Assembly: GCF_037042905.1 (NCBI RefSeq)
Contig: NC_087245.1
Coordinates: 31,000,001 to 31,064,000 of the forward strand
Reading direction: 5' to 3'
DNA length: 64,000 nucleotides
Origin: Lytechinus pictus
Lineage: Eukaryota
A program made the position numbers and the translations under genes. The notes under the pieces are model-generated. The model was not told where the DNA came from, made no database searches, and saw only the letters and a program-made list of their open reading frames with translations. Shown here piece by piece: positions 27,201 to 30,200 of this stretch. Every line of letters starts with the position of its first letter. Within the stretch, counting starts at the first letter, position 1.

Positions 27201-30200
27201 TTATCATTTTTAATCAATTTGAATCATAATTCAGTTTTAGTTATTGCTTCAGCATGGAAAAATTTTTACACACAAGGTCTTGAAACCTGAACTAGTCTAC
27301 ACAAAGGTCGAGGCTCTAATACACTTCAAAGCATAATAGAACCCAGCCTTTCTACGTCTACATCTACATTAAAACATCACACGATATAGAGTGAATGGTG
27401 CTACACGCAGAGATAGAAGAACCCTTCAAAAAAAGGAACTCCATCGTGGTTTGGTTCCCAACCTGTCTTCTTGCCCTTCCTCGACTTGAGTCCACGGAAT
27501 CCCTTCTGGATCATGAGGGCAGCCTTCTCTGTCTCCGGGGCGTCGAGGTCGATGTCAATCTCCTCCTCCTCTTCTTGCTTCTGCTGCTGCTGTTTCCGCG
27601 ATGACGACGAGCTACTGACCGTTTCTGTTTTGTTTCATTTGCAACATGTTTTTAATTTCAGATATCACCAACATGCACATGTTATGGTGGATAAGTTCAA
27701 CAAGAAGTTAATCAAGGAACTATGCAAAATCACATGGTACGATGCTCATGATTTAGATGAAAACCTTAATACTCCACTATTATCTAAAGAGATGCAATCA
27801 TTCTTACAATCAATTTTAGCTTTCTAGTACATAGTTTCATTGAAACATACAATTAACAACGGTCATAAGATTGATTGTATCTTTCTGGTAAGAGGTCAGG
27901 AGCCCTTTGCAGAAAGAATTGCATTTAAACTCAAGTTTAAAAATCAAGCGCGACTCCCAAAAGAGCACTGAAAAATCAAGTTGCATTTGATTTTAAGAGT
28001 CCTGTTTGATAGCAACTCTGTCTGCAAACGGTCTGAATCTTATTATTAAGAGGCATACCACTTAAGAAAAATGAATAAAAGTATTTTTAAAAAGTAATGT
28101 AAAAAAAGGGACATGGTAGATTTGAAAGGAGAATAACAGTACATTTCCAAAAAATAATGTCCAAGAATATCTGATGGGGCATGCTTGCTTTATTATCAAC
28201 CATCTCAAATCAATTGTAAATGCTGGGTGTGGGTGTTTAAAAATGCTGTTCGTAAGCTAAGCATGACTTTACGCACGGCTGGTAACCCTTTCTTCGCTAA
28301 ATGATATATCCTTAAGGAGCTGAGTTACATGTAGCACTTAAGCGCCTGTCCCAGTTGCGCGTAAAGTGAAGCGTAAGTTTAGGAACAGCTTTATGAAACA
28401 TCTAACTGAAGAGTTCCATTGATTGTATGAACAGATCGCCAGAGAGAACATGATGACAAATTACAGAGTTTTAATCTCACCTTCATCGTATGACGAAGCC
28501 TCTCTCCTGGACCTCCTGGTCGACGATGACGAAGACTCCTCCGTCGTTCTGCTGCTCTTGTACTCCCTGTAGCTGGACTCCTCGGTGTCGTCGGATACCT
28601 CCTTCCTTCTCCTCATGGACCTCGTCTCCTGGTGCTCCTGCTTCCTGTTGGGGTCACGGACTGCGGGTCAACGACACGGGACATTGATGTTAGACATCGT
28701 AATGAGGAGGAGGATGGTGATAAGAAAAGAAGGGGGATAATAAAGACGGCGAATAAAATAAATAAATGAAGGCAAAAAGGCATTAAAATATTACATTCAA
28801 TAATCCATATGTATAAATATTACATAAATGATGAAATATATTACATTGCTTATTCAAAAATATACATCAATATTACATTATGCATTAAAAATAGGGAAGC
28901 TCTAGGTTAGGATTTACATGTAAATATAATAAAGACTAGATCTATTCTTTTTTAATCCAACTTTTTAATCCAACAAACATTAAATAAAAAGAGCATGAAA
29001 AAAAGAGTATTCAATCTAACATTATTAACGTTTTAATATAAAGGTGGGCTCATGCTAATTATGTAAACAAGAGGGCGGAATAAAATTAATAGAAAATTGA
29101 GAAAAATGAATGAAAATATGAAAGGATTAGTTTTCTCACCTGAAAAGCAGAATGCAAGCTAAATGCTGGGTGGTAATGTGTGTGAATACATAGCATGAAT
29201 GAACTATGCAACAGGCTCTATGTAAAGGCGTGTATAAAAATGCAATAAGGTTGTGGACGAAAATGCACTATTTCTCCTCTCATGCAGACAAGAGGGAAAA
29301 AAGGAGCAATTATCCAGATTGAAATGTGAATGATTCAAATAACTTGGTATATCTGAAGACAAAATGGAGATATGTGAACAGAACAAGGTGACTGAGAAAT
29401 TGGGATTTTGAACGGAAAATGGAATAGAGTTTCGATAGAAATAGGAGGAAAAAGGAAAGAAAAATATACCTGTATGAAGGTTGACACAGACAAAAAAAAA
29501 AGATTTAATAAAAATTGGTTGAATGTAAGGAAGTGTGAAAGAGGCAAAATGGAAAGAAAAAAAAAAGTAATTCATAGAAGATGTCATTTTGTAAACAAGA
29601 ATAGATAATGCAAAAGTGGAGAAAATATTTTTTTTAATAAAAAGTATTCAATACGGCGAGATAGGAATGGGTGAAGAGAGGGGGAAGAGGGAAGGGAGAA
29701 TGAGAGAGAATATAAAGAAGAAGTAGAAGAAGAAAATGAGAGAGCATTTCAAGAGAAGTGGAGCTTTGGGCTAAAAATGCAGTAAATGTGCAACAAGTCT
29801 AAATTAAGTGAACAGTGCAGTCAGCTATAAATAAACATCAACAAACTGACATGCTATATACATACATGTATCGTGAAAAATAGAAACATTTGAATATTGG
29901 GAAAGTAAAAATTCAAGGCAATCAATAAAGCATAATGGAAGAGACGAAAATATATGATTCATGCACTCTTGGCATATGTTATATGAATTTATTGCAATTT
30001 CATCAAGCTTTTAAAGGTTTTATCTCACTTAATGATATTATTAGAAAAACATACTGTACTAGCTGAAAGGTGTATTGCTTTTCTTTCATCAAAGCATATA
30101 AAGCAGACACATTTTTGAATTTCTAGCACCAAATTAACATAGAAATGTAGAAATAAATAGATACGACGTTAATATGAATTAGGATTTCATAAGTCATTCA

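What the first reader, a model, noticed from the sequence alone, without database searches (positions are those of the whole stretch)
27463..27624. PEP-19/PCP4-like acidic-IQ calmodulin regulator embedded in a twitchin/titin-family gene
The exon translates to ...[37 protein letters not shown]. This aligns without gaps to the vertebrate PEP-19/PCP4 core as I recall it ([30 protein letters not shown]) and to PCP4L1 ([30 protein letters not shown]). In those small free proteins the acidic segment plus IQ accelerates Ca2+ exchange at the calmodulin C-lobe. It is not a standard part of twitchin, projectin or titin. It is missing from the ORF track because it has no start codon in this frame. It points to a tethered calmodulin modulator and possibly to a shared origin with the PCP4 family.
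Basis: partly seen in the sequence, partly recalled or inferred. Interest (0 to 1): 0.8.

Follow-up and report, generated by a model that had tools for sequence, protein, structure and literature searches.

The report
PCP4-like calmodulin module exon in twitchin
A real, alternatively spliced 54-codon exon of a sea-urchin twitchin (giant muscle protein) gene encodes one copy of the acidic-plus-IQ calmodulin module known from the small brain proteins PCP4 and PCP4L1. Sea stars have related IQ motifs at the same spot and acorn worms have seven tandem module copies there, so the module probably entered the gene long ago by exon shuffling.

Summary
Window 27624-27463 (minus strand) is a 162-nt, phase 1-1 exon. 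One contig skips it.

The spliced product is identical to Lytechinus pictus twitchin-like isoform X1. RefSeq isoforms X5 and X6 lack exactly these 54 residues.

The peptide is homologous to PCP4 (PDB 2N77 chain B, E 1e-7, no gap across the acidic and IQ parts) and to fish and amphioxus PCP4L1.

The module is not unique to this gene. Three other echinoid genera carry it. Sea stars have an IQ at the aligned place. Two hemichordate twitchins carry seven copies; mapped in Saccoglossus, each is its own 1-1 exon. Nine mollusc twitchins, one nemertean and one nematode protein show none.

The module sits just after the linker that in mussels holds the D2 phosphorylation site. It is the best-conserved segment of the C-terminal region (87% with Diadema, against 48-55% for the flanks).

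Calmodulin binding is inferred, not shown. The module has the PCP4L1-type Ile where PEP-19 has Phe30, and full-length PCP4L1 is reported not to bind calmodulin. The echinoid kinase lacks its catalytic Asp.

The exon is already in public gene models. I found no paper describing it as a PCP4-like module.

The parts
27463..27624 (-). Cassette exon of 162 nt (54 codons), phase 1-1. It encodes residues 4713-4767 of L. pictus twitchin-like X1.
   Evidence: Translation. GT-AG joints 28481>27624 and 27463>24078, and the skipping joint 28481>24078, in RNA-derived contigs. Present in RefSeq isoforms X1-X4 and absent from X5 and X6. Exact peptide mapping.
27575..27622 (-). Ser/Gln-rich spacer [16 protein letters not shown].
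   Evidence: It varies among echinoids.
27527..27574 (-). Acidic segment [17 protein letters not shown]-x-I-x-L aligns with the PEP-19 hydrophobic plug F30/I32/M34, and the Pro aligns with P37.
   Evidence: Alignment to 2n77_B. Residue roles from PMC5122967. Columns invariant in alignment A1.
27467..27526 (-). IQ helix [20 protein letters not shown] (IQxxFRGxxxRK).
   Evidence: Pfam IQ, E 0.0012. Alignment to PCP4 residues 41-58.
27625..28480 (-). Upstream intron, 856 nt, GT..AG, phase 1.
   Evidence: Joint in a contig of run X1.
24079..27462 (-). Downstream intron, 3384 nt, GT..AG, phase 1. It holds an abundant repeat at about 25267-25660.
   Evidence: Joint in contigs of runs X1 and X2, and the depth table.
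28481..28662 (-). Upstream linker exon (VRDPNRKQ...RRRKEVS...[13 protein letters not shown]) with basophilic-kinase-type RRxS sites. It lies at the same position as the molluscan twitchin D2 linker and resembles it in pattern.
   Evidence: Contig pieces and joints. Splice product. Comparison with mollusc linkers. D2 location from PMC12040844.
23929..24078 (-). Downstream linker exon ([16 protein letters not shown]...), 150 nt, phase 1-1.
23158..23310 (-). Next linker exon ([13 protein letters not shown]...), 153 nt, phase 1-1.
   Evidence: Joint 23929>23310..
32445..33430 (-). The two exons of post-kinase Ig domain 2 (about 33302-33430 and 32445-32624; edges are accurate to about 2 nt).
   Evidence: Pfam I-set. 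Peptide mapping.
21006..22232 (-). The two exons of the last Ig domain (about 22125-22232 and 21006-21248). The protein ends here.
   Evidence: Pfam I-set, E 6e-12. Peptide mapping to the C-terminus of X1.
43900..49780 (-). Kinase-domain exons of the host gene. The catalytic loop reads HLALRPQS.
   Evidence: tblastn with X1. Pfam Pkinase. Kinase alignment.

Best explanation
The stretch is an alternatively spliced, in-frame cassette exon of the sea-urchin twitchin gene. The window is identical to Lytechinus pictus twitchin-like. The exon inserts one acidic-plus-IQ module of the PCP4/PCP4L1 type into a disordered linker. This linker lies between the second post-kinase Ig domain and the last Ig domain. 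The exon comes directly after an RRxS-rich stretch that matches the molluscan D2 phosphorylation linker in position and resembles it in sequence pattern.

Origin (inferred): a symmetric phase 1-1 module exon was shuffled into a phase-1 intron of twitchin in or before the common ancestor of echinoderms and hemichordates. It was then multiplied to seven exons in hemichordates.

Function (inferred from homology, not shown): in isoforms that include the exon, the IQ helix docks the C-lobe of calmodulin, with or without Ca2+. The acidic segment lies over EF-hand III, as in the PEP-19:calmodulin structure. Twitchin on the thick filament would then hold a local, kinetically tuned pool of calmodulin. 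That pool could be handed to nearby Ca2+-dependent targets, for example calcineurin, which dephosphorylates the D2 site in molluscs. Splicing would set how many twitchin molecules carry the site.

The echinoid kinase lacks its catalytic Asp, so activating twitchin's own kinase is an unlikely purpose.
For: Splicing is shown.
- Contigs of runs X1 and X2 cover the exons, but not the unique (non-repeat) intron sequence.
- They join 28481>27624, 27463>24078 and, in the skipping form, 28481>24078, all with GT..AG.
- The included and skipped products equal RefSeq L. pictus isoforms X1-X4 and X5/X6 respectively.

Homology is shown.
- PCP4 in PDB 2N77_B scores E 1.1e-7 with no gap across the acidic and IQ parts.
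- PCP4L1 of fishes and amphioxus scores E 1e-5 to 1e-6.
- Of the 13 PEP-19 residues reported to contact or position calmodulin (F30, I32, M34, P37, T39, A42, A43, A45, I46, Q47, F50, R51, F53), 9 are identical here. The other 4 are hydrophobic replacements.

Selection is shown. Between L. pictus and Diadema the module is 86.8% identical. The upstream linker is 48%, the downstream linker 55%, Ig2 82% and Ig3 68%.

Phyletic pattern:
- one module in Lytechinus, Strongylocentrotus and Diadema;
- an aligned IQ in three sea stars, plus a canonical module in Asterias;
- seven modules after the same Ig domain in Saccoglossus and Ptychodera; mapped in Saccoglossus, each is a 1-1 exon;
- the closest modules to the urchin one are the hemichordate twitchin modules, at 24-25 of 32 residues.

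Exon logic:
- the cassette is phase 1-1 and its neighbours leave a phase-1 intron;
- the module exons of carp and amphioxus PCP4L1 start in phase 1, 19-21 codons before IDIDL.

The concept has a precedent. [quoted passage not shown] D2 is dephosphorylated by Ca2+/calmodulin-dependent PP2B (PMC12040844).
Against: - No binding data exist, and none could be computed here.
- The module has Ile, not Phe, at the place aligned with PEP-19 F30, and it has the EEEEE run of PCP4L1. Full-length PCP4L1 is reported not to bind calmodulin because of its Glu-rich element, and an Ile-to-Phe change restores binding (Morgan and Morgan 2012, as summarised in PMC5424795).
- The Pfam IQ score is just under the curated cut-off.
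- The resemblance to the molluscan D2 linker rests on position and on a low-complexity pattern, which is weak evidence for homology.
- The skipping isoform was seen in one contig of one run, though it is also present in RefSeq models.
- Two raw RNA runs of the species showed no reads on these exons, so the expressing tissue and the inclusion level are unknown.
- The shared phase at one exon boundary has about a one-in-three chance of arising by accident.
Confidence: 0.7

Rival explanations
1. The module is a latent or auto-inhibited IQ, as reported for PCP4L1. In the native linker the Glu-rich element with Ile keeps the IQ from binding calmodulin. The cassette would then act as a regulated site, unmasked by phosphorylation, stretch or a partner. 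Alternatively it could act mainly as a charged spacer that changes how the neighbouring phospho-linker interacts with actin or myosin.
For: The exon carries [10 protein letters not shown] with Ile at the PEP-19 F30 position, as do all PCP4L1 sequences retrieved. Full-length PCP4L1 does not bind calmodulin, and an Ile-to-Phe change restores binding (review PMC5424795). RRxS sites lie within 12-50 residues upstream, and a Ser lies in the basic tail of the IQ.
Against: The I-x-I-x-L form is the consensus of thousands of conserved modules in invertebrates: 2308 representative proteins at E<=1e-3, with arrays of up to 26 copies. That is hard to reconcile with a generally non-binding element. All IQ-helix contact residues are kept. 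Very strong conservation of the whole module argues against a mere spacer.
Confidence: 0.18
2. The IQ docks another EF-hand protein of muscle rather than calmodulin. Candidates are a myosin light chain, a troponin-C-like or calmodulin-like protein, or an S100-type protein.
For: It is established knowledge that IQ motifs bind myosin light chains and calmodulin-like proteins. Twitchin lies on the thick filament. Twitchin kinases are described in the literature as Ca2+/S100-dependent (reference list of PMC4472019).
Against: The residues that are conserved are those that contact the calmodulin C-lobe in 2N77, including the acidic plug that reaches EF-hand III. The closest relatives are calmodulin regulators.
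Confidence: 0.08
3. The stretch is an independent PCP4-like gene nested in a twitchin intron, or it is an assembly or annotation artefact.
For: The module is highly similar to free PCP4L1 proteins.
Against: There is no start codon, and splice sites sit at both ends. One 220-nt contig holds the upstream twitchin exon, the cassette and the downstream twitchin exon together. The same arrangement is seen in four echinoid genera and in RefSeq models.
Confidence: 0.01
4. The similarity is a chance match of low-complexity acidic and basic sequence.
For: The exon contains poly-S, poly-Q and poly-E runs.
Against: The E-values are 1e-7 (PDB), 1e-10 to 1e-6 (5.8 billion proteins) and 5e-25 (profile within the window). 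Thirteen columns outside the homopolymer runs are invariant.
Confidence: 0.01

Closest known systems
[quoted passage not shown]
   Same: It has the same acidic-plus-IQ core, [22 protein letters not shown]. It is 22 of 32 identical to the Electrophorus module and 74% identical to carp over the aligned core. Ile is at the first plug position. In carp, and in amphioxus by inference, the module exon starts in phase 1 about 20 codons before IDIDL.
   Different: PCP4L1 is a free protein of about 65-70 residues whose module exon ends in a stop codon. Here the module is an internal 1-1 cassette exon of a 4984-residue muscle protein. Full-length PCP4L1 is reported not to bind calmodulin; this has not been tested here.
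PCP4 / PEP-19 (PDB 2N77, complex with the apo calmodulin C-domain)
   Same: It is the only PDB match, at E 1.1e-7 with no gap across acidic residues 28-40 and IQ residues 41-58. Pro37, Thr39, Ala42/43, Ile46-Gln47, Phe50 and Arg51 are identical.
   Different: There are four replacements: Phe30>Ile, Met34>Leu, Ala45>Met and Phe53>Leu. The module is tethered rather than free. PEP-19's acceleration of Ca2+ on and off rates is only inferred for this module.
Hemichordate twitchin-like proteins (Ptychodera flava XP_070535071, Saccoglossus kowalevskii XP_077862134)
   Same: The host family is the same and the place is the same, directly after the second post-kinase Ig domain. These are the most similar modules, at 24-25 of 32 residues. 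In Saccoglossus, the one mapped, each module is a 1-1 exon.
   Different: They carry seven tandem modules, and the gene models end there. The urchin has one optional module followed by more linker and a last Ig domain. I found no paper on these predicted proteins; that search was not exhaustive.
Molluscan twitchin D2 linker (Mytilus, Ser-4316 between Ig21 and Ig22)
   Same: The position is the same, after the second post-kinase Ig domain, and the Ser/Arg-rich pattern is similar: TRKSRR..E..SSY. In molluscs this linker is phosphorylated by PKA and dephosphorylated by calmodulin-dependent PP2B.
   Different: No IQ or acidic-IQ module was found in nine mollusc twitchin models. Homology of the linker rests on low-complexity sequence.
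Obscurin IQ motif
   Same: It is an IQ calmodulin site between Ig domains of a giant sarcomeric protein (PMC2196875, listed).
   Different: The host family differs: obscurin has SH3 and RhoGEF domains and two kinases. The best hits here are twitchin. From my own knowledge, not a tool result, the obscurin IQ lacks the PCP4-type acidic IDIDL segment.
Neurogranin
   Same: It has an acidic stretch with hydrophobic anchors before an IQ, and it tunes Ca2+ binding to the calmodulin C-lobe (Discussion of PMC5122967).
   Different: It is a free neuronal protein with a different distribution of acidic residues. It was not retrieved by the searches here.

Membership tests
PCP4/PCP4L1 acidic-IQ calmodulin regulators | Significant sequence similarity across both the acidic segment and the IQ motif. 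| tested here: met
   2n77_B at E 1.1e-7 with no gap. PCP4L1 at E 1e-5 to 1e-6 in 5.8 billion proteins. Thirteen invariant columns.
PCP4/PCP4L1 acidic-IQ calmodulin regulators | IQ consensus (I/V/L)QxxxRGxxx(R/K). | tested here: met
   The sequence is [11 protein letters not shown]. Pfam PF00612 gives E 0.0012 at 18.9 bits, just under the 20.3-bit cut-off.
PCP4/PCP4L1 acidic-IQ calmodulin regulators | An acidic segment with three alternating hydrophobic anchors, ending in Pro just before the helix. | tested here: met
   I-D-I-D-L-D-A-P aligns with F30-D-I32-D-M34-D-A-P37.
PCP4/PCP4L1 acidic-IQ calmodulin regulators | A small free intrinsically disordered protein of about 60-90 residues. | tested here: not met
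   It is an internal exon of a 4984-residue protein. It is a homologous module, not a member of the gene family.
PCP4/PCP4L1 acidic-IQ calmodulin regulators | Binds the calmodulin C-lobe and speeds Ca2+ exchange (PEP-19 property). | not testable with these tools
   No calmodulin sequence could be obtained by the permitted routes, so no complex prediction was run. The PCP4L1 precedent argues for caution.
PCP4/PCP4L1 acidic-IQ calmodulin regulators | The module exon begins in phase 1 about 20 codons before IDIDL. | tested here: met
   Twitchin: 22 codons, phase 1. Carp PCP4L1: 21 codons, phase 1. Amphioxus: 19 codons, phase 1, inferred from a cag acceptor and the B. floridae protein.
Twitchin (UNC-22-type giant kinase), the host gene | Fn3/Ig repeats, one MLCK-like kinase domain near the C-terminus, and Ig domains after it. 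| tested here: met
   Open frames and Pfam. The window is about 100% identical to L. pictus twitchin-like X1, residues 3334-4984.
Twitchin (UNC-22-type giant kinase), the host gene | A catalytically competent kinase (HxD...KPEN catalytic loop). | tested here: not met
   Echinoids read HLALRPQS where molluscs and Ptychodera read HLD(I/L/V)KPEN. Asterias reads HLDLKPQS.
Obscurin/UNC-89 | SH3 and RhoGEF (DH-PH) domains plus two kinase domains. | tested here: not met
   There are no such domains in the window or in the X1 C-terminal 1085 residues. Obscurins score far below twitchins.

The most novel reading that the evidence does not exclude
The acidic-IQ unit may be an ancient, mobile phase 1-1 exon. 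On this reading the free vertebrate calmodulin regulators PCP4 and PCP4L1 are single-exon derivatives of the same exon pool that was wired into twitchin in the ambulacrarian ancestor. In echinoderm muscle the tethered, splice-controlled module would place calmodulin next to a D2-like phospho-switch on a catalytically dead kinase scaffold. That would give a Ca2+-timed control of a catch-like holding state that molluscs achieve with soluble calmodulin and calcineurin.
Probability: 0.15. Interest if true: 0.75.

Novelty: new variant of a known kind. Interest (0 to 1): 0.55.

Why it matters
Acidic-IQ regulators such as PEP-19 and neurogranin are studied as small free neuronal proteins. The authors of the PEP-19:calmodulin structure proposed that the same motif could work as a built-in docking module of a larger calmodulin target. 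They gave no example in the passage read.

Ambulacrarian twitchin is a natural example. It has one optional copy in sea urchins and seven in acorn worms. The module is strongly conserved and sits beside the linker that controls catch in molluscs.

This gives a concrete system, in the genetically tractable urchin L. pictus, for three questions:
- whether tethering changes what the module does;
- whether the Ile form of the plug binds calmodulin in its native context;
- how giant muscle pseudokinases sense Ca2+.

It also shows how a 1-1 exon can move a disordered regulatory motif between unrelated genes.

Tried and rejected
- Raw RNA runs. Runs X20 and X21 of the same species label gave no reads on these exons, only on an intronic repeat. 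They say nothing about expression.
- Representative search. The top 150 hits were filled by proteins with many tandem modules, so other giant proteins with a single module could not be listed.
- Complex prediction with calmodulin was not run.
  - An EF-hand search of the own genome returned no intact calmodulin open frame.
  - The tool's reference route covers bacteria, archaea and phages only.
- Papers not held. Morgan and Morgan 2012 (PMC3371134) and Funabara 2007 (PMC2219545) are not in the library. Their content is cited only through reviews.
- Failed look-ups. The B. floridae PCP4L1 locus is not on record. A first greedy peptide mapping went wrong on repeated motifs and was replaced by tblastn and anchored mapping.
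- Rejected readings:
  - a nested independent gene;
  - a chance or low-complexity match;
  - obscurin as the host;
  - further degenerate module copies in the window's introns: none found, the next best frame scores E 0.54.
- Literature. Searches for twitchin with IQ motif and calmodulin, and for twitchin with sea urchin, found no description of this module.
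Full report
**1. The observation**

On the minus strand, window 27463-27622 translates to [53 protein letters not shown]. The other two frames of that strand contain stops. The DNA shows an acceptor 'aaacag|AAACGG' at 27624 and a donor 'ACAG|gttggg' at 27463. The exon is therefore 162 nt, or 54 codons. It takes one base from the exon before it and passes one base to the next, so it is phase 1-1.

A profile of the core scores E 4.9e-25 on this open frame among all 2070 open frames of the window. 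The next best is E 0.54, so there is exactly one copy here and it is not a chance match.

**2. Is it spliced into the host transcript?**

I laid four runs on window 23100-29000. Contigs of runs X1 and X2 cover exons and repeated elements only. Unique intron sequence has zero depth, and the contigs carry canonical GT..AG joints, so they are RNA-derived.

The joints are:
- 28481>27624 (X1);
- 27463>24078 (X1 and X2);
- 23929>23310 (X1 and X2);
- 28481>24078 (X1 only), which skips the exon.

One 220-nt contig holds 30 nt of the upstream exon, the whole cassette and 27 nt of the downstream exon. Two raw RNA runs of the same species label had no reads on these exons and are uninformative.

**3. The host gene and the organism**

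The minus strand carries Fn3, Ig and kinase exons. tblastn shows the window is closest to sea-urchin twitchins. It matches residues 3334-4984 of Lytechinus pictus twitchin-like isoform X1 (XP_063956323, 4984 aa) at about 100%.

My spliced product with the exon is identical to L. pictus isoforms X1-X4. The product without it is identical to isoforms X5 and X6, and X5 is exactly 54 residues shorter than X1. So the cassette and its skipping are already in public gene models. I found no paper that describes it.

The order after the kinase is: Ig, a 13-residue exon, Ig, linker exon 28662-28481, the cassette, two more linker exons, a last Ig, then the stop.

**4. What the peptide is**

- PDB. The only match is PCP4 in entry 2N77, its complex with the apo calmodulin C-domain. 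It scores E 1.1e-7 and aligns without a gap across acidic residues 28-40 and the IQ helix 41-58.
- Large protein collection. Against 5.8 billion proteins the exon hits PCP4L1 of fishes and amphioxus (E 1e-5 to 1e-6), a Lottia fragment (1e-10) and the same exon of another echinoid (7.6e-13).
- Pfam. The IQ model gives E 0.0012, 18.9 bits against a 20.3-bit cut-off.
- Contact residues. Wang and Putkey (PMC5122967) list F30/I32/M34 as the hydrophobic plug, P37 as required, and T39, A42, A43, A45, I46, Q47, F50, R51 and F53 as helix contacts. Here 9 of these 13 are identical. The other four are hydrophobic replacements (F30>I, M34>L, A45>M, F53>L).

**5. An important caveat**

The first plug residue is Ile, as in every PCP4L1 sequence retrieved, not Phe as in PEP-19. 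It follows an EEEEE run.

A review (PMC5424795) summarises Morgan and Morgan 2012. Full-length PCP4L1 does not bind calmodulin because of a Glu-rich element outside the IQ, and changing a single Ile in that element to Phe restores binding. That this Ile is the one aligned here is my inference; the original paper is not held.

**6. It is not unique to this gene**

A profile search of 1.84 billion representatives found 2308 proteins at E<=1e-3. Many carry up to 26 tandem modules, often with an RIIa domain.

Two hits are hemichordate twitchin-like proteins, from Ptychodera flava and Saccoglossus kowalevskii. Each has seven tandem acidic-IQ modules directly after the second post-kinase Ig domain.

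Findings in other twitchins:
- Echinoids: S. purpuratus, L. variegatus, Diadema antillarum and D. setosum each have one module at the same place.
- Sea stars: Patiria, Acanthaster and Asterias have an IQ (TIQQGFREY) aligned to the urchin IQ, right after RRSKRRE. Asterias also has a canonical [25 protein letters not shown].
- No module by pattern search: nine mollusc twitchins, a nemertean twitchin-like protein, an annelid fragment and a nematode protein that the search returned. A cassette missing from a gene model would escape this test.

The urchin module is most similar to the hemichordate twitchin modules (24-25 of 32) and to the Lottia fragment (25 of 32). Next come a single module elsewhere in its own genome (23 of 32) and fish PCP4L1 (22 of 32).

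**7. Selection**

Between L. pictus and Diadema the module is 86.8% identical. The upstream linker is 48.1%, the downstream linker 54.6%, and the folded Ig domains on either side are 81.7% and 67.7%. The module is the best-kept segment of the region.

**8. Exon logic and origin**

- The cassette is phase 1-1 and sits in what would otherwise be a phase-1 intron.
- In Saccoglossus each of the seven modules is its own exon, and all are phase 1-1.
- A single module on contig 17 of the own genome is a 105-nt exon with 'cag|AAGAG...ACAG|gtacag', again 1-1. Contig 8 holds a cluster of at least four modules.
- In carp PCP4L1 the last exon starts in phase 1, 21 codons before IDIDL.
- In amphioxus a 'tctttttcgccacag' acceptor gives phase 1, 19 codons before IDIDL.
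- In twitchin the distance is 22 codons.

This fits shuffling of a symmetric exon followed by tandem exon duplication in hemichordates. A shared phase at one boundary is by itself weak evidence, with about a one-in-three chance.

**9. Context that bears on function**

The exon before the cassette encodes ...[10 protein letters not shown]...[13 protein letters not shown]. Mollusc twitchins have, after the same Ig domain, a linker with a similar pattern: Littorina TRKSRRTEIEEESY and Mytilus NRSSRRVEESSYED.

[quoted passage not shown] It is phosphorylated by PKA and dephosphorylated by Ca2+/calmodulin-dependent PP2B (PMC12040844). The resemblance is low-complexity, so I count the shared position as the stronger argument.

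The echinoid kinase has HLALRPQS where molluscs and Ptychodera have HLD(I/L/V)KPEN. The catalytic Asp is missing.

**10. Most likely mechanism**

Shown:
- the cassette is a conserved, optional part of twitchin;
- it is homologous to the calmodulin-contacting part of PCP4.

Inferred:
- in including isoforms the IQ helix docks the calmodulin C-lobe and the acidic segment lies over EF-hand III;
- thick-filament twitchin therefore holds calmodulin next to a phospho-regulated linker and can pass it to nearby Ca2+-dependent enzymes such as calcineurin;
- splicing sets how many twitchin molecules carry the site.

Rivals:
- a latent, PCP4L1-like IQ that needs unmasking;
- a different EF-hand partner.

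A nested gene and a chance match are excluded.

**11. Verdict**

The finding is real and the reading is largely right. It is a known module in a new architecture: tethered, splice-controlled and old within Ambulacraria. It is already present in predicted protein models, and I found no paper describing it. Calmodulin binding remains to be shown.

Noticed in passing
window 45777-46782 (minus), kinase exons: The catalytic loop of the echinoid twitchin kinase reads HLALRPQS. The catalytic Asp is replaced by Ala and the loop Asn by Ser. This holds in Lytechinus, Strongylocentrotus and Diadema. Asterias keeps the Asp (HLDLKPQS). It is probably a pseudokinase.
   Followed up: partly
window 25267-25660: An intronic repeat has very high depth in all four runs (thousands in the contigs). 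Many reads begin at 25493/25494 and run on into unrelated sequence. It is probably an abundant transcribed mobile element.
   Followed up: no
G000:C8:10574791-10616237 (L003-L006) and G000:C17:9582287-9582379 (L002): The same genome has a cluster of at least four acidic-IQ module exons on contig 8. It also has a single 105-nt phase 1-1 module exon on contig 17 ([36 protein letters not shown]). The genes they belong to were not worked out.
   Followed up: partly
proteins P0028, P0029, P0188-P0192 and others: There is a large family of invertebrate proteins with 10-26 tandem acidic-IQ modules. Many also have an RIIa (PF02197) domain. The automatic names they carry, such as 'titin-like', 'kinesin-related' and 'neurofilament', look misleading.
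   Followed up: no
window about 1600-14500 (minus): Open frames downstream of twitchin resemble a sodium/solute symporter (SLC5-like). An example is [32 protein letters not shown].
   Followed up: no
window 37224-37262 (minus): A 39-nt exon ([13 protein letters not shown]) lies between post-kinase Ig1 and Ig2. L. pictus isoforms X1-X6 also differ by 9, 19 and 25 residues elsewhere, so other small optional exons exist.
   Followed up: no
window about 16070-16330: An assembly gap (197 N) lies between the twitchin 3' end and the downstream gene. It was left as it is.
   Followed up: no
Patiria P0303 and Acanthaster P0304, linker after the IQ: These sea stars show half-modules (QAIEVDLEGAKEEE, EAIDVDLGGAKRED) at the place where Asterias has a full second acidic-IQ module. 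This suggests either decay or an optional exon missing from those models.
   Followed up: no
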